NCBI RefSeq assembly: GCF_001194135.2
Contig: NC_068997.1
Location: 9,584,344 to 9,619,874 of the forward strand
Reading direction: 5' to 3'
DNA: 35,531 nt
Source: Octopus bimaculoides
Taxonomy: Eukaryota
In this document: in pieces, positions 1-31,849 of the stretch
Numbering within the stretch: the first letter of the stretch is position 1
Layout: every line of letters begins with the position of its first letter
Program-made: the position numbers and the translations under genes
Notes under the pieces: model-generated
What the model saw: only the letters and a program-made list of their open reading frames with translations
Told to the model about the DNA's origin: nothing
Databases searched by the model: none

Positions 1-368
1 ATGTCCATACCAGCGCAATCGTCTCTCTTGCACGCCACAACTGATGCTTCTAATGTTCAGCTTTTCTCTCAAGATACTTACACTCTGACGGGTATTCACA
101 TTGACATTACACATCCAACGGAGCATACTGGCTTCATTCCTTGCGAGCTTACGTATGTCCTCAGCAGTTACAGCCCATGTTTCACTGCCATGTAGCATGG
201 TTGTTCGTACGCATGCGTCATACAGTCTGCCTTTTACTCTGAGTGAGAGTCCCTTTGTCGCCAGCAGGGGTAAGAGCTCTCTAAACTTTGCCCAGGCTAT
301 TCTTATTCTAGCAGCTACACTTTCAGCGCACCCACCCCCACTACTAACTTGGTCGCCCAGATAGCGGA
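1..368 (-). mobile_element. RTE-clade non-LTR retrotransposon ORF2 fragment (RT thumb/C-terminal region), 5'-truncated at ~368 and running off the window start
   Basis: Manual translation of the reverse complement 366->1 gives 122 stop-free codons: RYLGDQVSSGGGCAESVAARIRIAWAKFRELLPLLATKGLSLRVKGRLYDACVRTTMLHGSETWAVTAEDIRKLARNEASMLRWMCNV...QERRLRWYGH. The YLG, AW.KF, K..LY, GSETW and RLRW.GH motifs are typical of RTE ORF2. There is no ATG, so it is absent from the ORF track. Confidence 0.93.
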
Positions 369-635
369 TTCATTATATATGCATATAACCATTACAGATA
401 CATATAACCATTATATATATGTGCATATAACCATAACATAAACATCAGCCATATAAATATACACACACACGTATATACATACATATACACACACACATAT
501 ATATATACATATGCACACACATATACATATATACACATGCACACACACATATACATACATATACACTCACACATATATATACACATGCACACACACACAT
601 ATATACACATGCACACACACATATACACACACACT
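369..635. repeat. Compound (TA)n/(CA)n low-complexity microsatellite
   Basis: Direct inspection. Confidence 0.9.
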
Positions 636-832
636 TCATTATTAAAGCTGCAAAAACATCACAAAAAACTGTTACTCAGAGTTTCACGCCCCTGTTCATC
701 GGACAGTTTTGGTTGAGAACATCTAAATGGCTACAACCATTTCTGCAGCTTTGACAATAAAGTATATTACTCTACCTCTGGTATTCGAGTACTATTTTTT
801 TCCACCTTGTTTCACATTTATGTGCTTACCCT
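636..832 (-). mobile_element. Probable Penelope-like element (PLE) terminal/pLTR fragment carrying a hammerhead motif
   Basis: Contains a minimal type I hammerhead with a palindromic helix III (the PLE-associated type) and an inverted repeat (644-657 vs 739-752). No PLE protein-coding sequence is visible, so the class is inferred. Confidence 0.5.
665..710 (-). ncRNA. Type I hammerhead ribozyme motif (minimal, U4C variant, predicted dimeric)
   Basis: Minus strand reads AAAACUGU-CCGAUGA-ACAGGGGCGU-GAAA-C-UCUGA-G-UA^-ACAGUUUU: perfect 8-bp stem I (703-710/665-672), core CCGAUGA (696-702) and GAAA (682-685), short stem II, 1-bp stem III, and GUA cleavage triplet (675-673). Confidence 0.72.
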
Positions 833-895
833 GGTGTGTGTGTGTGTATATATAAATATGTGTGTGAATGTGTGTGTGTGTGTGTGTATATATAT

Positions 896-1049: not shown

Positions 1050-1896
1050 CAGGGTGTGATGGGTAAATTGTAGCCATCATATATTTTTAATTTTGCACAT
1101 GTGCATTGTTTTTGATTTTGTCAACTACACAGTATAGTAGGGTCAGATGGGCACCGTCTGTGAGAAAAACAGCACCATGACGCAATTCACTTTGCCAGAA
1201 ATTTAGAAACGACATGCTAAGCTCCAAAATGAACATTTCAGAGTGCTTGGGTGTCAATCTAAGGACAGTGCAATCTGAGAACATGTACGAAGAGTGATAC
1301 AAACCAAACATCCAGTCAACATCATGATGTTTGGAGTGATCACGAGTGAGGGCAACATTATGCTTCCATTTATCTTCCCACATGGCCTCAGACTCAACAC
1401 AGAGTCCTACATCAAGTACCTGGAGGGGGTAGTGCTGCCTTAGATCCCTATGTCTGGCAACACAACTCTGTACCCTGCCACACAAGCAGATGAAGCCAGT
1501 CATGGCTGACAGACAATTTCTGCGACCACATCACCCCTAACATCTGGCCACCTAACTCCTCAGACTGCAGCCCCCTTGATTATTATATGTGGGGTGCAGT
1601 TGAACAAGAGACCAACAAAACTCCTTGTAACACCGAAGATGAACTGAAGACAAGGATTATGGCAGCATTCGCCAACTTAAACAAGGAGAACATCCAGAAT
1701 AGTTGCAGGAGATTCCAAAGCCGTCTGGAGGCCTTGGTTGAAGCCAATGGCAATTTTATTAAATAAATTTACTCCTTAGTATTTCAAGATATTTTTATGT
1801 AATTTTGAATTTTGGTAAATATATCTGTTAAAATGAGATGTCAGTGTTATTTTCATTTATATGTAATTTAGACGACAGTTTGTTCACCGCACCCTG
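1050..1896 (+). mobile_element. Tc1/mariner superfamily, DD37D (maT-type) element, internally deleted and non-autonomous
   Basis: Imperfect TIRs CAGGGTGTGATGGGTAAATTGTAGCC (1050-) and reverse complement CAGGGTGCGGTGAACAAACTGTCGTC (-1896). TA follows the right end (1897-1898) and CA precedes the left end. Internal transposase remnants are present. Confidence 0.88.
1177..1766 (+). pseudogene. Degenerate DD37D transposase
   Basis: 1294-1766 translates ...TKHPVNIMMFGVITSEGNIMLPFIFPHGLRLNTESYIKYLEGVVLP*I / PYVWQHNSVPCHTSR*SQSWLTDNFCDHITPNIWPPNSSDCSPLDYYMWGAVEQETNK...LEALVEANGNFIK*. There are 37 residues between the second catalytic position (now N, 1464) and the third D (1578). Stops at 1441 and 1491, frameshift/deletion at ~1446, and most of the N-terminus is deleted. 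Confidence 0.88.
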
Positions 1897-2914: not shown

Positions 2915-3136
2915 CGCACACATTGTAGCCATTTAGATGTTCCTATTCAATGTTATAAATTCCTTTATATTTTATTTTTCTGTTATAACAAAAATTTTAA
3001 TGCCATCAAAAAAAAAAAAATGACCAATCAAAAATATGAGAGTATAAAACTTGCCATCCCATTAGAAGGATAGTTAATAATAAAAATAGGATCATTCTTT
3101 GCCATGAAATGAACAAGTATATTGATATTTCTTTAA

Positions 3137-5301: not shown

Positions 5302-5630
5302 NNNNNNNNNNNNNNNNNNNNNNNNNNNNNNNNNNNNNNNNNNNNNNNNNNNNNNNNNNNNNNNNNNNNNNNNNNNNNNNNNNNNNNNNNNNNNNNNNNN
5401 NNNNNNNNNNNNNNNNNNNNNNNNNNNNNNNNNNNNNNNNNNNNNNNNNNNNNNNNNNNNNNNNNNNNNNNNNNNNNNNNNNNNNNNNNNNNNNNNNNNN
5501 NNNNNNNNNNNNNNNNNNNNNNNNNNNNNNNNNNNNNNNNNNNNNNNNNNNNNNNNNNNNNNNNNNNNNNNNNNNNNNNNNNNNNNNNNNNNNNNNNNNN
5601 NNNNNNNNNNNNNNNNNNNNNNNNNNNNNN
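5302..5630. other. Assembly gap (N run)
   Basis: Run of N. Confidence 1.
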
Positions 5631-6723: not shown

Positions 6724-7051
6724 NNNNNNNNNNNNNNNNNNNNNNNNNNNNNNNNNNNNNNNNNNNNNNNNNNNNNNNNNNNNNNNNNNNNNNNNNNNNN
6801 NNNNNNNNNNNNNNNNNNNNNNNNNNNNNNNNNNNNNNNNNNNNNNNNNNNNNNNNNNNNNNNNNNNNNNNNNNNNNNNNNNNNNNNNNNNNNNNNNNNN
6901 NNNNNNNNNNNNNNNNNNNNNNNNNNNNNNNNNNNNNNNNNNNNNNNNNNNNNNNNNNNNNNNNNNNNNNNNNNNNNNNNNNNNNNNNNNNNNNNNNNNN
7001 NNNNNNNNNNNNNNNNNNNNNNNNNNNNNNNNNNNNNNNNNNNNNNNNNNN
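6724..7051. other. Assembly gap (N run)
   Basis: Run of N. Confidence 1.
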
Positions 7052-7099
7052 NGGGGGGGGGTATGTGTGTGTCTAACTAGATTAGTGAGAACTTATTTG

Positions 7100-7514
7100 T
7101 CAAGCATGCGTGCTTTAAGTAAATTCCAGCTGTGGTGGAGTGGATATGAAGTGGAATTCTTGACTTCAGTCTCCCTGAACACATCTTAGGTAGACAAGCA
7201 GCTGGCTCTTGGTCAGGTGGTGAGCCAACGAAGAGATACAAAGAGATGCTGAAGACAACTTTAAAAAAGTGTAGTTTAAAATGGTCTACTTTGGAATATC
7301 TTGCTCAAGATTGTTCACTGTGGCATAGTGCTGTGTACTCTGAGATATAACACTCAGGGTCAGAAATGATCAGAGAAGCAAAAGGGAGTGGAGAGCTACA
7401 TGGAAAGCAAGAGTACCACCAGGTCCTGATTCTGTTATTACATGCTCCCACTGTAACCATGGATTTCATGCCAAAATTGGCCAAATAAACAACCTCATGA
7501 CCCACAAAATGTAA
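7100..7514 (+). mobile_element. Old RTE/BovB-like LINE ORF2 C-terminal fragment with zinc-knuckle-like end
   Basis: With frameshifts: QLWWSGY...LPEHILG...SGGEPTKRYKEMLKTTLKKC...STLEYLAQDCSLWHSAV and ITCSHCNHGFHAKIGQINNLMTHKM*, resembling the QLRWSGHV, KRYKD.LK, LAQDR..W and CxxC...IGL.SH.RTH end of RTE/BovB-like ORF2. Confidence 0.75.
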
Positions 7515-9381: not shown

Positions 9382-9534
9382 AGGTGCAGGCATGGCTGTG
9401 TGGCTAAGAACCTTCCTTCCTAACTATGTGGTCTTGGGTTCAGTCCCACTGTGCAGCACCTCAGGTAAGTGTCTTCTATTTATAGCCCCAGGTCAACCAA
9501 AGCCTTGTAGATAGAAACTGAAAGAAGCCCACCA

Positions 9535-10352: not shown

Positions 10353-10810
10353 TTTTTGTGTGGTTAAGAAGCTTGCTCTGCAACCATGTGGTTTCAGGTT
10401 CAGTCCTACAGTGCAGCACTTTGGACACGCATCTTCTACTACAGATATGAGCCAACCAATACCTTGTGATTGAATTTGGTAGACAGAAACTGTGTGGAAT
10501 CCCATTCTGTGTGTGTATTCTTTTATTCTTTAATATGTTTCAGCCTTGAGACTGCGGCCATGCTGGAGCACTGCCATTTTTCAAAAGAGATGCTTACGGC
10601 ACCTAGGATTCCCAAGCAGTCACCCACCACCACTTAACAACTGGTGTTGGTTTGTTTACATTCCCATTACTTAATGGCCTTGGCAAAAGTGATTGATACC
10701 AGACTTAAAAACAAAAATAAGTACTGGGGGTCGATTTGTTCAGCTAAAACACTTGAAGGTGCTGCCCCAGCATGGCCAGGGTCTAATGACAGAAACAAGT
10801 AAAAGAAGAT
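10353..10810 (+). mobile_element. Fragmented SINE cluster (plus-strand head 10353-10505, minus-strand tail 10518-10576, plus-strand body/tail 10630-10810)
   Basis: Blocks match the 27539-27940 family in both orientations. Confidence 0.7.
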
Positions 10811-11022: not shown

Positions 11023-11086
<64 letters not shown>

Positions 11087-11196
11087 CCAGGTTCATTCCC
11101 ACTGCGTGGCACCTTGGGCAAGTGTTTTCTACTATAGCCTCAGGCAGACCAAAGCCTTGTGAGTGGATTTGGTAGACGGAAACTGAAAGAAGCCCG

Positions 11197-17624: not shown

Positions 17625-17963
17625 ATGGCTGTGTGGTAAAGAAGCTTGCTTTTCAATCATGGGGACTGAGGTTCAGTCCCGGTGTCTGTTACCTTGTACA
17701 AATATCTTCTACTGTAGCCCCTGGTCAACTAATGCAATGTATGTGGATTTGGTAGACAGAAACTAAAAGAAGCCTACATATATGAGAGAGAGAGAGAGAG
17801 CATACCTTCGCCTAGACATCAGGTGTTGATTATAAATGAACATCACCATCATACCAGCAATGAAAAACATGTCTACCTATAGGAAAATATTACTTTGCTT
17901 GGAAACAGGTGAAAGTTGGCAGCAGGAAGGGCATCCAGCTGTAGGAAATCTGGTGACGATGAT
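17625..17963 (+). mobile_element. SINE: tRNA head/core, (GA)n, and RTE-like tail
   Basis: ATGGCTGTGTGGTAA A box, GGTTCAGTCCC B box, GGATTTGGTAGACAGAAACT core, tail CAGGAAGGGCATCCAGCTGTAGG...GATGAT. Confidence 0.75.
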
Positions 17964-19539: not shown

Positions 19540-19890
19540 NNNNNNNNNNNNNNNNNNNNNNNNNNNNNNNNNNNNNNNNNNNNNNNNNNNNNNNNNNNNN
19601 NNNNNNNNNNNNNNNNNNNNNNNNNNNNNNNNNNNNNNNNNNNNNNNNNNNNNNNNNNNNNNNNNNNNNNNNNNNNNNNNNNNNNNNNNNNNNNNNNNNN
19701 NNNNNNNNNNNNNNNNNNNNNNNNNNNNNNNNNNNNNNNNNNNNNNNNNNNNNNNNNNNNNNNNNNNNNNNNNNNNNNNNNNNNNNNNNNNNNNNNNNNN
19801 NNNNNNNNNNNNNNNNNNNNNNNNNNNNNNNNNNNNNNNNNNNNNNNNNNNNNNNNNNNNNNNNNNNNNNNNNNNNNNNNNNNNNNNNNN
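19540..19890. other. Assembly gap (N run)
   Basis: Run of N. Confidence 1.
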
Positions 19891-20374: not shown

Positions 20375-21045
20375 AATAATCTTTTCTGTTCTGGACACAA
20401 GGCCTGAAATTTGGGGGGTGGGGGAGGACAGTTGATTATATTGACTCCTGTATGCAACTGGTACTTAATTTAATGACTCCAAACGGATGAAAGGCAAAGT
20501 CGACCACGGCGGAATTTGAACTCAGAACATAAAGACAGACAAAATACTGCTAAGCATTTCGCCCAGTGTGCTAACATTTCTTATTTCTTTATTGCCCACA
20601 AGGGGCTAAACATAGAGGGGACAAACAAGGACAGACAAAGGGATTAATTCAATTACATCGACCCCAGTGCGTAACTGGTACTTAATTTATTGACCCCAAA
20701 AGGATGAAAGGCAAAGTCGACCTTGGCAGAATTTGAACTCAGAACGTCATAGCAGATGAAATACTGCTATGCATTTCGACCGGCGTGCTAACATTTCTGC
20801 CAGCTCGCCGCCTGAGAAAAAGATTAATAATTTTTTCTACTCTAGGCACAAGGCCTGAAATTTTGGGGAAGGGGGCCATTCGATTAGATCAAATCCAATA
20901 TGCAACTGGTACTTAATTTATCGACCCAGAAAGGATGAAAGGCAACGTCGACCATGGCGGAATTTGAACTCAGAACATAAAGACAGACAAAATACTGCTA
21001 AGCATTTCAGCCAGCATGCTAACATCTCTGTCAGTTTGTCGCCTT
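20375..21045 (-). mobile_element. Head-to-tail trimer of tRNA-headed SINEs (units 20826-21045, 20582-20813, 20375-20581)
   Basis: Each unit carries reverse complement GAGTTCAAATTC (B box) followed by GTCGAC(T/G)TTGCCTTTCATCC...AAATTAAGTACCAGTT. Confidence 0.88.
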
Positions 21046-21339
21046 ACAAAGAAATTAATTATGATAAAAGAATGGATGGGTAAAGAACCAATCCAAGAAA
21101 CTAAATATAAAAATTACTATAATACTATAAGAAATGAGTTGACTTAGTTCTTCATGTTACTCAAAGTTTTATGAACGTCTTTTCATTTCCATGAAACTTG
21201 AAGAAACATGAGGAGTCAAGCCAACTTGTTATTCAATAAATGTGACTGTGTATGTTGAGTGCTACTTCCGTTTGTTTGTTAATCTACTTGTGTGCACATA
21301 TATATATATATTAAAATACAGATGTAGATTACATGAAGG

Positions 21340-22264: not shown

Positions 22265-22421
22265 NNNNNNNNNNNNNNNNNNNNNNNNNNNNNNNNNNNN
22301 NNNNNNNNNNNNNNNNNNNNNNNNNNNNNNNNNNNNNNNNNNNNNNNNNNNNNNNNNNNNNNNNNNNNNNNNNNNNNNNNNNNNNNNNNNNNNNNNNNNN
22401 NNNNNNNNNNNNNNNNNNNNN
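22265..22421. other. Assembly gap between (TG)n and (TA)n
   Basis: Run of N. Confidence 1.
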
Positions 22422-25524: not shown

Positions 25525-25727
25525 NNNNNNNNNNNNNNNNNNNNNNNNNNNNNNNNNNNNNNNNNNNNNNNNNNNNNNNNNNNNNNNNNNNNNNNNNNNN
25601 NNNNNNNNNNNNNNNNNNNNNNNNNNNNNNNNNNNNNNNNNNNNNNNNNNNNNNNNNNNNNNNNNNNNNNNNNNNNNNNNNNNNNNNNNNNNNNNNNNNN
25701 NNNNNNNNNNNNNNNNNNNNNNNNNNN
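25525..25727. other. Assembly gap (N run)
   Basis: Run of N. Confidence 1.
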
Positions 25728-27538: not shown

Positions 27539-27940
27539 AGGAGTGGCTGTGTCGTAAGTAGCCTGCTTACCAACCACATGGTCCGGGGTTCAGTCCCACT
27601 GCATGGCACCTTGGGCAAGTATCTTCTACTATAGCCTCGGGCCGACCAAAGCCTTGTGAGTGGATTTGGTAGACGGAAACTGGAAGAAGCCCGTCGTATA
27701 TATATATATATATATGTGTGTATGTATGTGTGTATACGTTTGTGTGTCTGTGTTTGTCCCCCCAACATCACTTGACAACTGATGGCGGTTTGTTTACATC
27801 CCTATAACTTAGTGGTTCGGCAAAAATGTGACTGACAGAATAAATACTAGGCTTACAAAGAATAAGTCCTGGGGTTGATTTTCTCGACTAAAGGCGGTGC
27901 TCCAGCATGGCCGCAGTCAAATAACTGAAACAAGTAAAAG
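27539..27940 (+). mobile_element. Full-length tRNA-headed SINE (octopus OR/OK-like) with central (TA)n(TG)n
   Basis: A box TGGCTGTGTCG (27544-27554), B box GGTTCAGTCCC (27587-27597), CTTGGGCAAG core, tail GGCGGTGCTCCAGCATGGCCGCAGTCAAATAACTGAAACAAGTAAAAG. Confidence 0.9.
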
Positions 27941-30067: not shown

Positions 30068-30803
30068 ATAGAAGACAAACAAAGTCTTACAACAGGTCTA
30101 AAAATGTTAAACCTAACAGATGTTAGATCTAACTTATATCACCATGACAAAATATAAAAACTAATAATGATGATTTTTGTGTTATATAATACAAAAAGGT
30201 TTCTGAAAGTCTTAGAGAAGAAACCATGAAAGTCAAAGAGCACAAACTAATGACATAGTATATGGTAGATGTGTGCATATTTTTTTGAGAAATGTCAACT
30301 GGTTACTGGCCAAGTCATTCTTAATAACATATGGTCTGTGGAGATGGTGTAACACTTTCAGTCCATATCACAGAGTATGCATGGCTCAACCACACTGCAC
30401 AAATCATTTATGCTTCCTGGGGCAGAAAAACTTGTGAACTTGTGTTCAGCATATTTATGTAGAATCTGCAATGCAGAAAAACCCATAAATAATTTGATTC
30501 GATTTCTCTTTGAAAAACAAATGTTAGTTAAGAATACTGGTCATAACGACAATGTAGAACGATTTATGGATTAACAGATTTAGAGATAATTAAAGACATC
30601 AGAGTCTAAATAACAATCTATAATAATGATTCCTCATCTGGGTAGAAGACTGACATTTGGTAAGTAAAGGATGTGTAGTCAATTGATCTCATCCTTGAAT
30701 ACATGTGTCTGGCATTTATTTTAACATCTGAAGAATCTTGGAAGGCAAAGTCCATCTTGACAAGATTTGAACACAGAACATAAAGAGATGTAATAATATA
30801 TTT

Positions 30804-31173: not shown

Positions 31174-31574
31174 CCTTTTATTCTTTTACTTGTTTCAGTC
31201 ATTTGACTGTGGCCATGCTGGAGCACTGCCTTTAGTTGAGCAAATCGACCCCAGGACTTATTCTTTGTAAGCTTAGTACTTATTCTATTGGTCTCTTTTA
31301 CCAAACCGCTAAGTTACGGGAACATAAACACACCAACATCAGTTGTCAAGCAATGTTGGGGGGGGGGGACAAATGCACATATGCACACACACACACACAC
31401 TCACGCACACATATATACGATGGGCTTCTTCAGTTTCCATCTACCAAATCCACTCACAAGGCTTTGGTTGGCCCAAGGTTATAGTGGAAGACACTTGCCC
31501 AAGGTGCCATGCAATGGGACTGAACTTGGAACCATGTGGTTGGTAAGCAAGCTACTTACCACACAGCCACTCCT
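31174..31574 (-). mobile_element. Full-length SINE of the 27539-27940 family, inverted
   Basis: Reverse complement starts AGGAGTGGCTGTGTGGTAAGTAGCTTGCTTACCAACCACATGG and is collinear to the tail. Confidence 0.9.
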
Positions 31575-31849
31575 GTGCCTATGTATATATATATATATTT
31601 TATATACATATGCAAGATGTTTAGCCCAACATGCTCTGCACTCTGCTACTCCATTTCTCTCTGTAGCACAAAATGATAATATGTCTTAACTGTCCAATTT
31701 CTAGTAATCTAGCTGTTGAGTCAAAGGCAAGCAGAATTTTATGCAGCAACTCCAGTGAAGGAAAGTTCTACCATTTTAACATTAGAACTTGTAGGAGATA
31801 GATTCTAAGTGCCAATATCACAAATTAGACATGTGCTTGCGTATATGCA

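What the first reader, a model, noticed from the sequence alone, without database searches (positions are those of the whole stretch)
665..710. Minimal type I hammerhead ribozyme with a U4C core and a dimer-forming helix III
Seen: the minus strand folds with a perfect 8-bp stem I, core CCGAUGA...GAAA...UA, and a GUA^ site (predicted cut between + positions 673 and 672). Stem III is a single C-G pair, but ACUCUGAGU is self-complementary, so two molecules would form 8 bp with one central U-U mismatch. Established: Penelope-like retroelements carry minimal hammerheads with palindromic helix III that cleave as dimers. Inference: this is a PLE- or retrozyme-type ribozyme in a cephalopod-like genome. 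C replaces the canonical U4 and stem II has an A-C mismatch (one A>G change would restore 3 bp), so this copy may be either a natural variant or decayed.
Basis: partly seen in the sequence, partly recalled or inferred. Interest (0 to 1): 0.85.

Follow-up and report, generated by a model that had tools for sequence, protein, structure and literature searches.

The report
Degenerate solo hammerhead motif in octopus
A 46-base stretch of an octopus genome really does have the shape of a minimal hammerhead self-cutting RNA of the kind carried by retroelements, but it is a lone copy with a weakened catalytic core, so it is most likely an ordinary relic.

Summary
On the minus strand, 710->665 reads AAAACUGU|CCGAUGA|ACAGGGGCGU|GAAA|CUCUGAG|UA^|ACAGUUUU. 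Helix I is a perfect 8 bp, the site is GUA with the cut between 673 and 672, position 4 is C, helix II has 2 bp plus an A.C mismatch, and ACUCUGAGU is a palindrome.

It is the only such motif in the window and is very unlikely by chance (about 0.002 expected per window without the palindrome, lower with it).

The 13-mer GAAACUCUGAGUA recurs in genuine minimal hammerheads from coral-host and marine contigs. There helix I covaries, and one family lies about 100 nt downstream of an RT plus GIY-YIG-like ORF. One marine motif has exactly the same 8 / 3+4+3 / 7 layout. All of those have U4. Every C4 match lacked helix I.

The window is Octopus (a LINE fragment 96-99% identical to O. bimaculoides proteins). 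The motif sits about 30 nt from the 3' end of a 197-bp island between microsatellites. There is no tandem partner, no Penelope ORF and no second copy.

Rfam finds nothing, but it also misses the positive controls.

Best reading: a solo, probably crippled relic of a retroelement-type hammerhead. Whether C4 is fixed in the family could not be tested, because no octopus genome was reachable. This is a known kind of element and of low interest.

The parts
665..710 (-). Hammerhead-like motif, type I topology, 46 nt: AAAACUGU CCGAUGA ACAGGGGCGU GAAA CUCUGAG UA ACAGUUUU
   Evidence: Read directly. It is the sole descriptor hit in the window.
703..710 (-). Helix I, 5' arm (AAAACUGU)
   Evidence: Forms 8 Watson-Crick pairs with 665-672.
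696..702 (-). Core box 1, CCGAUGA (canonical CUGAUGA; C at position 4 = window base 701)
   Evidence: The C4-G5 step is a CpG.
686..695 (-). Helix II, ACA-GGGG-CGU: A-U and C-G pairs, then an A.C mismatch (A693.C688)
   Evidence: ACG>ACA is the CpG-decay direction, and window CpG observed/expected is 0.32.
682..685 (-). Core box 2, GAAA
674..682 (-). Helix III with the palindrome ACUCUGAGU (intramolecular A-U and C-G pairs only). Two copies would pair over 8 bp with a central U.U.
   Evidence: The duplex of the palindrome is -9.9 kcal/mol. The identical GAAACUCUGAGUA occurs in coral and marine minimal hammerheads.
672..673 (-). Predicted cleavage site GUA^A, between 673 and 672
   Evidence: The position follows from the hammerhead numbering applied. 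Cleavage itself was not tested.
665..672 (-). Helix I, 3' arm (ACAGUUUU)
711..738 (-). Side hairpin GGUUG...CAACC, immediately 5' of helix I
   Evidence: Predicted in the 135-nt fold. It overlaps the 20-nt exact repeat 717-736.
739..760 (-). Outer stem, 5' arm (UUAUUGUCAAAGCUGCAGAAAU)
   Evidence: Pairs with 636-657 over 21 bp including 4 G.U pairs. The 135-nt fold is -37.4 kcal/mol, z = -3.0. The plus strand gives -29.4, z = -2.8.
636..657 (-). Outer stem, 3' arm (GUUUUUGCAGCUUUAAUAAUGA)
636..832 (-). 197-bp non-repetitive island carrying the motif. The hammerhead ends 29 nt before the island's 3' end (ribozyme orientation).
   Evidence: There is no other copy in the window.
451..635 (.). (CA/TA)n microsatellite flanking the island
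   Evidence: Tandem Repeats Finder.
834..895 (.). (TG/TA)n microsatellite flanking the island on the other side, running into the assembly gap 896-1043. On the plus strand it is the reverse complement of the left-hand motif.

Best explanation
This is a solitary genomic copy of a minimal type I hammerhead motif of the kind carried near the 3' end of Penelope-like retroelements and their non-autonomous derivatives (retrozyme-like repeats). It lies in a 197-bp retroposon fragment between microsatellites in an Octopus genome.

Inferred mechanism in the parent element: the motif is transcribed on the minus strand. Helix I (8 bp) and helix II form within the RNA. The palindrome ACUCUGAGU of two copies (tandem units or two transcripts) pairs to build the long helix III that a single copy lacks. 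Each composite core then cuts after GUA, which trims the retroelement RNA to unit length.

Inferred state of this copy: it has no partner nearby, C instead of U at core position 4, and a helix II reduced to two pairs. It is therefore most likely catalytically crippled or dead, a relic rather than a working ribozyme.

Shown: the sequence anatomy, its improbability by chance, and its identity of layout and helix III with genuine hammerheads elsewhere. Inferred: descent from a retroelement, the dimer mechanism and the loss of activity.
For: 1. The anatomy is exact, and it is the only hit in the window.
2. Chance expectation is about 0.002 per window, or lower once the palindrome is required.
3. 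A metagenome scan for C[CU]GAUGA-N6-16-GAAACUCUGAGUA returned 38 loci. The AT-rich, gene-poor (eukaryote-like) contigs carry a repeat family with a perfect core. Its helix I pairs with compensatory changes across families: 6 of 8 pairs change on both sides, and 0 of 500 shuffles reach the observed covariation.
4. L020 has the same segment lengths as the candidate: helix I 8 bp, helix II 3 bp plus a tetraloop, CUCUGAG, 46 nt. Its helix II is fully different in sequence.
5. The coral-host family lies about 100 nt 3' of an ORF with a CxCx5Cx5C plus IIYQ..YIG..R..H pattern, preceded by RT-like remnants. It is followed within about 50 nt by a sharp 3' boundary that often abuts TA-rich repeats, and in L039 it has an inverted second copy. 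This matches the published Penelope architecture: hammerhead near the 3' end, inverted truncated copies and insertion bias for microsatellites (PMC8557442).
6. The candidate has the same placement: 29 nt from the island's 3' end, with microsatellites on both sides.
7. Penelope-like elements are abundant and mostly old in octopus genomes (PMC13282606; PMC8967140).
8. U4C is reported to lower activity considerably in vitro (PMC3088659).
9. The hammerhead fold of the monomer is 9 kcal/mol above the MFE.
Against: - No other copy of the island could be found, so homology to a repeat family in this genome is not demonstrated. This covers the window, called proteins of public assemblies and the metagenome hits.
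- No Penelope RT/EN remnant lies next to it.
- It lacks the G10.1-C11.1 pair, the bulged nucleotide after A9 and the long helix II that Cervera and de la Pena list for Penelope minimal hammerheads.
- Pfam, PDB sequence search and fold search did not confirm that the coral ORF is a GIY-YIG endonuclease. The Penelope link of the comparison family therefore rests on motifs read by eye and one weak HTH_animal hit.
- Helix I is perfectly intact. That is odd for an old decayed copy and leaves room for a young or functional copy.
- Rfam gives no hammerhead hit. It also misses the positive controls, so this is uninformative.
Confidence: 0.6

Rival explanations
1. A working natural variant. C4 and the short A-U-closed helix II are features of an Octopus hammerhead family, and the RNA still self-cleaves at GUA^A, as a helix III dimer or with help from the surrounding three-way-junction fold.
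For: - Helix I is flawless, and only two positions depart from an ideal motif.
- A U4C variant keeps enough activity in vivo for viroid infectivity, and natural hammerheads with 2-bp helix II exist (PMC3088659).
- The motif is embedded in a 135-nt fold that is significantly stable, z = -3.0.
- T>C, which creates a CpG, is not the favoured mutation direction in a genome with CpG observed/expected of 0.32.
Against: - All hammerhead-structured relatives retrieved with a pattern that allowed C or U at position 4 have U4. All 12 C4 matches lacked helix I.
- The helix II mismatch fits CpG decay.
- The hammerhead fold is 9 kcal/mol less stable than a competing CAGGG/CUCUG pairing.
- There is no partner copy within the window for dimer formation.
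- Even canonical-core Penelope minimal hammerheads cleave poorly in vitro.
Confidence: 0.12
2. A chance resemblance. The region is a short inverted-repeat (foldback or MITE-like) sequence or the tail of an unrelated repeat, and the loop of its 8-bp hairpin happens to match a one-mismatch hammerhead core.
For: - The core is imperfect, helix II is marginal, and Rfam is silent.
- The nested inverted repeats fold almost as well on the plus strand, z = -2.8.
- The relaxed descriptor gives up to 0.05 hits per window when G-U pairs and microsatellite stems are allowed, so a whole genome would contain some chance motifs.
- No family copy was found.
Against: - With Watson-Crick helix I of at least 8 bp plus a palindromic helix III, none was seen in 80 Mb of simulated strands.
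- The 13-mer GAAACUCUGAGUA is exactly the module of genuine minimal hammerheads, and the segment lengths equal those of L020.
- Chance matches to the same pattern never have a helix I.
- No terminal inverted repeats with target-site duplication are evident at the island ends.
Confidence: 0.2

Closest known systems
Minimal hammerhead ribozymes of Penelope-like elements (Cervera and de la Pena 2014, PMC4209133)
   Same: - Type I topology.
- Helix III reduced to 1-2 bp with a palindromic sequence that could pair between two copies.
- Mostly found as dispersed single motifs in animal genomes.
- Position close to the 3' end of a retroposon-like fragment next to microsatellites.
- Low or undetectable activity expected for a single copy.
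   Different: - C4 instead of U4.
- A10.1-U11.1 instead of the highly conserved G10.1-C11.1.
- No unpaired nucleotide between A9 and 10.1.
- Helix II of 2(-3) bp instead of 6-8.
- Helix I of 8 bp instead of 4-5.
- No RT/GIY-YIG ORF or second motif nearby in the window.
Coral-host contig family found here (L005, L011, L015, L026-L028, L035, L037, L039, L040): GCAGUUGC CUGAUGA UUGCUU..AAGCAU GAAACUCUGAGUA GCAAU
   Same: - Identical GAAACUCUGAGUA (core 2, helix III and cleavage triplet).
- Type I topology.
- About 30-50 nt from a sharp 3' end of the repeat.
- TA/CA-type simple repeats often lie at the junction.
- Decayed solo copies are common.
   Different: - The coral motifs have U4, helix I of 4-5 bp and helix II of 4-5 bp closed by U.U.
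- They sit downstream of an RT plus GIY-YIG-like ORF.
- There is no sequence similarity outside the 14 nt shared with the candidate.
Marine metagenome motif L020 (CEUP01011425.1): GACAACAU CUGAUGA UGCUUCGGCA GAAACUCUGAGUA AUGUUGUC
   Same: Exactly the same segment lengths: 8-bp helix I, 7-nt core, 3+4+3 helix II, GAAA, CUCUGAG and UA, 46 nt in all. The 10.1-11.1 pair is non-G-C (U-A there, A-U here).
   Different: - Canonical U4 and an intact 3-bp helix II with a UUCG loop.
- Helix I and II sequences are unrelated.
- The source organism and the surrounding element are unknown.
Metazoan non-LTR retrozymes (Cervera and de la Pena 2020, PMC7229834) and amphibian satellite hammerheads
   Same: - Type I hammerhead in AT-rich repeats of a few hundred bp.
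- Weak helix III with a palindromic loop that works through dimers (amphibians).
- Self-paired RNA around the ribozyme.
   Different: - Retrozymes are tandem arrays (dimers to long multimers) with canonical cores and usually loop 1-loop 2 contacts.
- Here there is a single unit, no tandem, C4, and no recognisable tertiary-contact loops.
U4C core variant in a viroid hammerhead (cited in Perreault et al. 2011, PMC3088659)
   Same: The same substitution at core position 4 in a natural hammerhead, with reduced activity in vitro.
   Different: The viroid ribozyme has stable helices and tertiary contacts and is under selection for replication. Nothing comparable is shown here.

Membership tests
Hammerhead ribozyme (general consensus) | Conserved core CUGAUGA ... 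GAAA | tested here: not met
   The core reads CCGAUGA ... GAAA, so 10 of 11 invariant core positions are kept and U4 is C.
Hammerhead ribozyme (general consensus) | Three helices around the core in the order I-core-II-GAAA-III-UH-I, with the A15.1-U16.1 pair and a non-G at position 17 | tested here: met
   Helix I has 8 bp. Helix II has 2 bp plus an A.C mismatch. Helix III has A-U and C-G. The site is GUA. Helix II is at the lower limit seen in natural examples (PMC3088659).
Hammerhead ribozyme (general consensus) | Match to a curated Rfam hammerhead model | tested here: inconclusive
   No hit at the gathering score or at E<=10. Perfect-core minimal hammerheads from L039 and L020 are also missed, so the models do not cover this class.
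Hammerhead ribozyme (general consensus) | The active fold is thermodynamically accessible | tested here: not met
   The monomer hammerhead fold is -1.3 kcal/mol against an MFE of -10.3, which uses a competing CAGGG/CUCUG pairing. The z-score of the 46-mer is -1.1. Minimal hammerheads are expected to need a dimer, so this does not exclude the class.
Hammerhead ribozyme (general consensus) | Site-specific self-cleavage | not testable with these tools
   This needs in vitro transcription or RNA end mapping.
Penelope-like element minimal hammerhead | Helix III absent or 1-2 bp, with palindromic 15.2-16.2/loop 3 allowing a dimer | tested here: met
   ACUCUGAGU is self-complementary, and the duplex is -9.9 kcal/mol.
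Penelope-like element minimal hammerhead | Highly conserved G10.1-C11.1 pair | tested here: not met
   The pair here is A695-U686. The feature is as listed in PMC4209133.
Penelope-like element minimal hammerhead | [quoted passage not shown] | tested here: not met
   No register with a bulge gives a better helix II.
Penelope-like element minimal hammerhead | Long helix II (6-8 bp) and short helix I (4-5 bp) | tested here: not met
   Helix II is 2-3 bp and helix I is 8 bp. L020 shows that this alternative layout exists with a canonical core.
Penelope-like element minimal hammerhead | Lies in the terminal repeat of an element with an RT plus GIY-YIG ORF, or belongs to a genome-wide family of such motifs | tested here: not met
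   No RT/EN remnant in the window by tblastn with the coral ORFs or by inspection of the six-frame translation. The neighbouring RT fragment (1-369, minus strand) reads by eye as a LINE-type post-RT region, and Pfam gives it no family. Genome-wide family membership was not testable, because no octopus genome was reachable.
Penelope-like element minimal hammerhead | Second motif in tandem or nearby (the source filtered at under 50 kb) | tested here: not met
   It is the only descriptor hit in 35.5 kb. Six assembly gaps, one of them 63 nt from the island, could hide sequence.
Metazoan non-LTR retrozyme | Tandem repeats of 150-450 bp, each with a type I hammerhead | tested here: not met
   No tandem repeat of the island and no second copy.
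Metazoan non-LTR retrozyme | Low GC and highly self-paired unit RNA | tested here: met
   The island has GC 0.37. The 135-nt segment folds into a three-way junction with a 21-bp outer stem, z = -3.0.
Metazoan non-LTR retrozyme | Expressed as linear and circular RNA of unit length | not testable with these tools
   No transcriptome data were available.

The most novel reading that the evidence does not exclude
C4 and the short A-U-closed helix II are the consensus of an Octopus repeat family. That would be a retroelement hammerhead lineage with a fixed U4C core, embedded in a compact 135-nt three-way-junction RNA (outer 21-bp stem plus side hairpin), that still self-cleaves through helix III dimers.
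Probability: 0.1. Interest if true: 0.55.

Novelty: new member of a known kind. Interest (0 to 1): 0.22.

Why it matters
If the reading is right, it adds one more, probably dead, example to the thousands of retroelement-borne minimal hammerheads known in animal genomes, and extends them by direct sequence evidence to an octopus. That is expected, because Penelope-like elements are abundant in cephalopods.

It would matter more only if the C4 core proved to be fixed and active in a family. That would be a natural experiment on tolerance of a core position generally treated as invariant.

A practical by-product: Rfam's hammerhead models miss this whole minimal class, including perfect-core examples. 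Genome annotation by Rfam alone therefore under-counts them.

Tried and rejected
1. Rfam at gathering and at E<=10 on 336-nt and 76-nt slices gave no hammerhead. I rejected this as evidence against the motif once the positive controls also failed.
2. A search for octopus copies through spurious ORFs found nothing at E<=10. The query was a concatenate of all stop-free frames of 630-835, run against 5.8 billion proteins.
3. The exact 20-mer TTGTAGCCATTTAGATGTTC has no hit in viral contigs.
4. The LINE RT fragment identified the species. It also showed that the contig collections hold almost no octopus DNA, with close hits on contigs of 1.6 kb or less or on none. Harvesting megabases of octopus sequence was therefore not feasible.
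5. Full-text search for GAAACUCUGAGUA or its complement, and searches of the supplements of four papers, found nothing relevant.
6. tblastn of the coral RT/EN pieces against the window found nothing below E = 0.1.
7. I tried to prove that the coral ORF is a GIY-YIG nuclease. All attempts were negative or non-significant:
   - Pfam.
   - PDB sequence and profile searches.
   - AlphaFold model (mean pLDDT 56, core 130-200 at 85-91) with Foldseek against PDB.
   The GIY-YIG restriction enzyme Hpy188I appears only at E = 3.8.
8. tRNA scan for a SINE-type origin of the island: none found.
9. I looked for flank similarity between the island and L020 or the coral repeats. Only the 14-nt hammerhead module is shared.
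10. Extension of the second 20-mer site (2923-2942) into a diverged copy of the island: no further similarity.

Full report
**Observation**

The minus strand of the window from 710 to 665 reads AAAACUGU CCGAUGA ACAGGGGCGU GAAA CUCUGAG UA ACAGUUUU.
- Helix I has 8 Watson-Crick pairs (710-703 with 672-665).
- Core box 1 has C in place of U4 (base 701).
- Helix II consists of A695-U686 and C694-G687, followed by an A693.C688 mismatch around a GGGG loop.
- GAAA lies at 685-682.
- Helix III has only A15.1-U16.1 and C681-G675.
- The 9-nt palindrome ACUCUGAGU lies at 682-674.
- The site is GUA, which places the predicted cut between 673 and 672.

A descriptor of my own allowed one core mismatch and required helix I of at least 5 bp, helix II of at least 2 bp and helix III of at least 1 bp. 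It finds this motif and no other on either strand of the 35.5-kb window.

**Is it more than chance?**

I simulated 6 Mb under first- and third-order Markov models of the window. With G-U pairs allowed, one-mismatch motifs with helix I of at least 8 bp occurred 0 and 9 times. The upper bound is therefore about 0.05 per window.

With Watson-Crick pairs only and 40 Mb simulated (both strands scanned), there were 2 such motifs. Both were built on microsatellite stems, and none had a short palindromic helix III. That gives about 0.002 per window before the palindrome is required and well below that afterwards. A handful per 2-3 Gb genome remains possible.

An empirical control points the same way. 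The pattern C[CU]GAUGA-N6-16-GAAACUCUGAGUA matched 38 loci in the metagenome collection. The 12 matches with C4 come from GC-rich or gene-dense contigs and have a helix I of 0-1 bp. The 8-bp helix I of the candidate is therefore not a property of chance matches.

**Rfam**

No hammerhead family is hit at the gathering score on the whole window, nor at E<=10 on 336-nt and 76-nt slices. This is not informative. The same search misses a perfect-core minimal hammerhead from a coral-host contig (L039) and the perfect-core L020 motif with 8-bp helix I and 3-bp helix II. Rfam's hammerhead models do not cover this minimal class.

**Related sequences**

Among the 26 U4 matches of the metagenome scan, the AT-rich, gene-poor contigs carry a clear repeat family...GCAGUUGC CUGAUGA UUGCUUUGUAAGCAU GAAACUCUGAGUA GCAAUAAAUG.... 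One contig also encodes NACHT and DZIP3-HEPN domains, as cnidarian genomes do.

The copies share a sharp 3' boundary about 50 nt after the cleavage site. They have variable 5' extents, and TA-rich or (TATG)n repeats often lie at the junction.

In L037, L039 and L040 the motif lies about 100 nt downstream of an ORF with three features:
- a CxCx5Cx5C cluster;
- a nearly invariant IIYQ...YIG...R..H...E pattern;
- upstream remnants resembling an RT, with the motif C region reading LHRDGGL in L040 (a YxDD box is not preserved) and an FLDVTL...YVH..S.HPP region.

L039 carries a second, inverted copy of the hammerhead 1.3 kb upstream. By my reading this is a Penelope-like element. The arrangement matches published descriptions: hammerhead near the 3' end, inverted 5'-truncated copies and insertion bias for microsatellites (PMC8557442).

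I could not confirm the endonuclease assignment with tools. Pfam, PDB sequence and profile searches and a Foldseek search of an AlphaFold model were all negative or non-significant. One homologue has a weak precomputed HTH_animal hit. The Penelope link of the comparison family is therefore an inference.

A second comparison matters more for the anatomy. L020, a marine metagenome contig, reads GACAACAU CUGAUGA UGCUUCGGCA GAAACUCUGAGUA AUGUUGUC. It has exactly the segment lengths of the candidate (8 / 7 / 3+4+3 / 4 / 7 / 2 / 8, 46 nt). Its 10.1-11.1 pair is non-G-C, and its helix I and II sequences are entirely different.

I aligned the candidate with L020, L034 and six coral copies. Helix I was not part of the search pattern, yet it is paired with changes on both sides in 6 of 8 pairs. 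None of 500 shuffles reached the observed covariation, and slid controls fall away. GAAACUCUGAGUA is therefore a recurrent module of genuine minimal hammerheads, and the candidate conforms to their structure with its own helix I.

All structured relatives have U4.

**Context in the window**

The minus-strand translation of 1-369 is the C-terminal part of a LINE-type reverse transcriptase. It is 96-99% identical to Octopus bimaculoides proteins, so the genome is an octopus's.

The motif lies in a 197-bp island (636-832). A (CA/TA)n tract lies at 451-635 and a (TG/TA)n tract at 834-895, the latter running into an assembly gap at 896-1043. In ribozyme orientation the hammerhead ends 29 nt before the island's 3' end, the same placement as in the coral family.

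The window holds none of the following:
- a second copy of the island;
- a tandem repeat of the island;
- a tRNA-like part;
- a Penelope RT/EN remnant.

A 20-nt exact repeat of 736-717 occurs at 2923-2942 next to another microsatellite. It has no further similarity and remains unexplained.

Penelope-like elements are a substantial and mostly old repeat class in octopus genomes (PMC13282606; PMC8967140).

**Folding**

The 46-mer's MFE (-10.3 kcal/mol, z = -1.1) keeps helix I but pairs CAGGG of helix II with CUCUG of helix III. The hammerhead fold scores only -1.3. The palindrome duplex alone is worth -9.9 kcal/mol, so a dimer could compete with the misfold.

The 135-nt segment 770->636 folds into a three-way junction with three arms:
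- a 21-bp outer stem (739-760 with 636-657, including four G.U pairs);
- a side hairpin (738-711);
- the helix I hairpin.

Its energy is -37.4 kcal/mol, z = -3.0. The plus strand folds less well (-29.4) but with a similar z of -2.8. The inverted repeat is therefore real, but it does not by itself identify the functional strand.

**The two lesions**

CpG observed/expected in the window is 0.32. The A at 10.3 turns an ACG into ACA, which is the classic CpG-decay product, and restoring G would give a 3-bp helix II as in L020.

C4 creates a CpG (CCG), which is not the decay direction. It is either an ordinary T>C transition or a family trait.

The literature says core changes are generally crippling. 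It also says a U4C variant, although much less active in vitro, supports viroid infectivity, and that 2-bp helix II occurs in nature (PMC3088659). Even canonical-core Penelope minimal hammerheads show no activity as monomers and only low activity as dimers or trimers (PMC4209133).

**Interpretation**

The most likely account (about 0.6) is a solitary relic of a retroelement-borne minimal type I hammerhead. In the parent RNA, two copies would pair through the palindrome into a long helix III and cut after GUA to trim unit-length RNA. This copy lacks a partner, has C4 and has a 2-bp helix II, so it is probably inactive.

A working U4C variant (about 0.12) and a chance look-alike inside an inverted-repeat sequence (about 0.2) remain open.

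On membership:
- It meets the palindromic helix III criterion of Penelope minimal hammerheads.
- It fails the G10.1-C11.1 pair, the bulge after A9, the helix-length criteria and the ORF-association criterion.
- It fails the tandem-array criterion of retrozymes.

It therefore works like that class, with L020-like anatomy, but it cannot be filed as a demonstrated member of either family.

**Limits**

The decisive test is a family consensus from the octopus genome. It could not be run, because none of the searchable collections holds octopus assemblies. I found no paper that describes hammerheads in cephalopods. Their presence is nevertheless expected from the abundance of Penelope-like elements.

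**Verdict**

The feature is real, its kind is known, and this copy is probably dead. Interest is low unless C4 proves to be fixed and active.

Noticed in passing
window 1-369 (minus strand): C-terminal part of a LINE-type reverse transcriptase, 5'-truncated and running off the window start. It is 96-99% identical to Octopus bimaculoides UniRef proteins, which identifies the genome. Pfam gives no hit for this post-RT region.
   Followed up: partly
window 717-736 (minus) and 2923-2942 (plus): Exact 20-nt repeat TTGTAGCCATTTAGATGTTC (0.01 expected by chance). The second site directly follows a (GT)n/(GC)n tract and is followed about 60 nt later by an A13 run. There is no similarity beyond the 20 nt. 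Its origin is unexplained.
   Followed up: partly
window 451-635 and 834-895: The two microsatellites flanking the island are reverse complements of each other on the plus strand: (CA)n on the left and (TG)n on the right. The island does not simply interrupt one continuous tract.
   Followed up: no
window 1087-1763: Stop-free stretches on both strands. One, SQSWLTDNFCDHITPNIWPPNSSDCSPLDYYMWGAVEQ, reads like the C-terminal part of a Tc1/mariner transposase. Pfam gives no hit, so this rests on my own reading.
   Followed up: partly
window 9405-9478, 10365-10438, 17638-17711, 27555-27628 (also about 11059-11194 and 31240-31690): Four or more diverged copies of a SINE-like repeat with a GGTTCAGTCCCAC (B-box-like) segment. 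ARAGORN calls no tRNA in them.
   Followed up: no
window 20421-21062 and 30709-30786: Three tandem units of about 217-231 bp (71-79% identical over the 194-nt unit; 86-90% over a 78-nt core) and a fourth dispersed partial copy.
   Followed up: no
whole window: Strong CpG depletion (observed/expected 0.32, against 1.02 for GpC). There are six assembly gaps (896-1043, 5302-5630, 6724-7052, 19540-19890, 22265-22421, 25525-25727) and very dense (CA)n, (TA)n and (GA)n microsatellites.
   Followed up: partly
window 7344-7511 (plus): Weak BED zinc-finger match (E = 0.003, below the Pfam cut-off) in a short stop-free stretch. This may be a transposase remnant.
   Followed up: no
L039 5541 (minus) and 6864 (plus); L037 3545-4150; L040 5001-6010: Coral-host contigs carry a truncated RT plus GIY-YIG-like ORF followed after about 100 nt by a perfect-core minimal hammerhead. 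L039 has an inverted second hammerhead 1.3 kb upstream. Pfam, PDB and Foldseek do not recognise the ORF, although more than 490 homologues exist.
   Followed up: partly
L039 6800-6960 and L020 1940-2062: Rfam release 15 hammerhead models fail to report perfect-core minimal hammerheads even at E<=10 on slices of about 150 nt. This whole class is invisible to Rfam-based annotation.
   Followed up: yes
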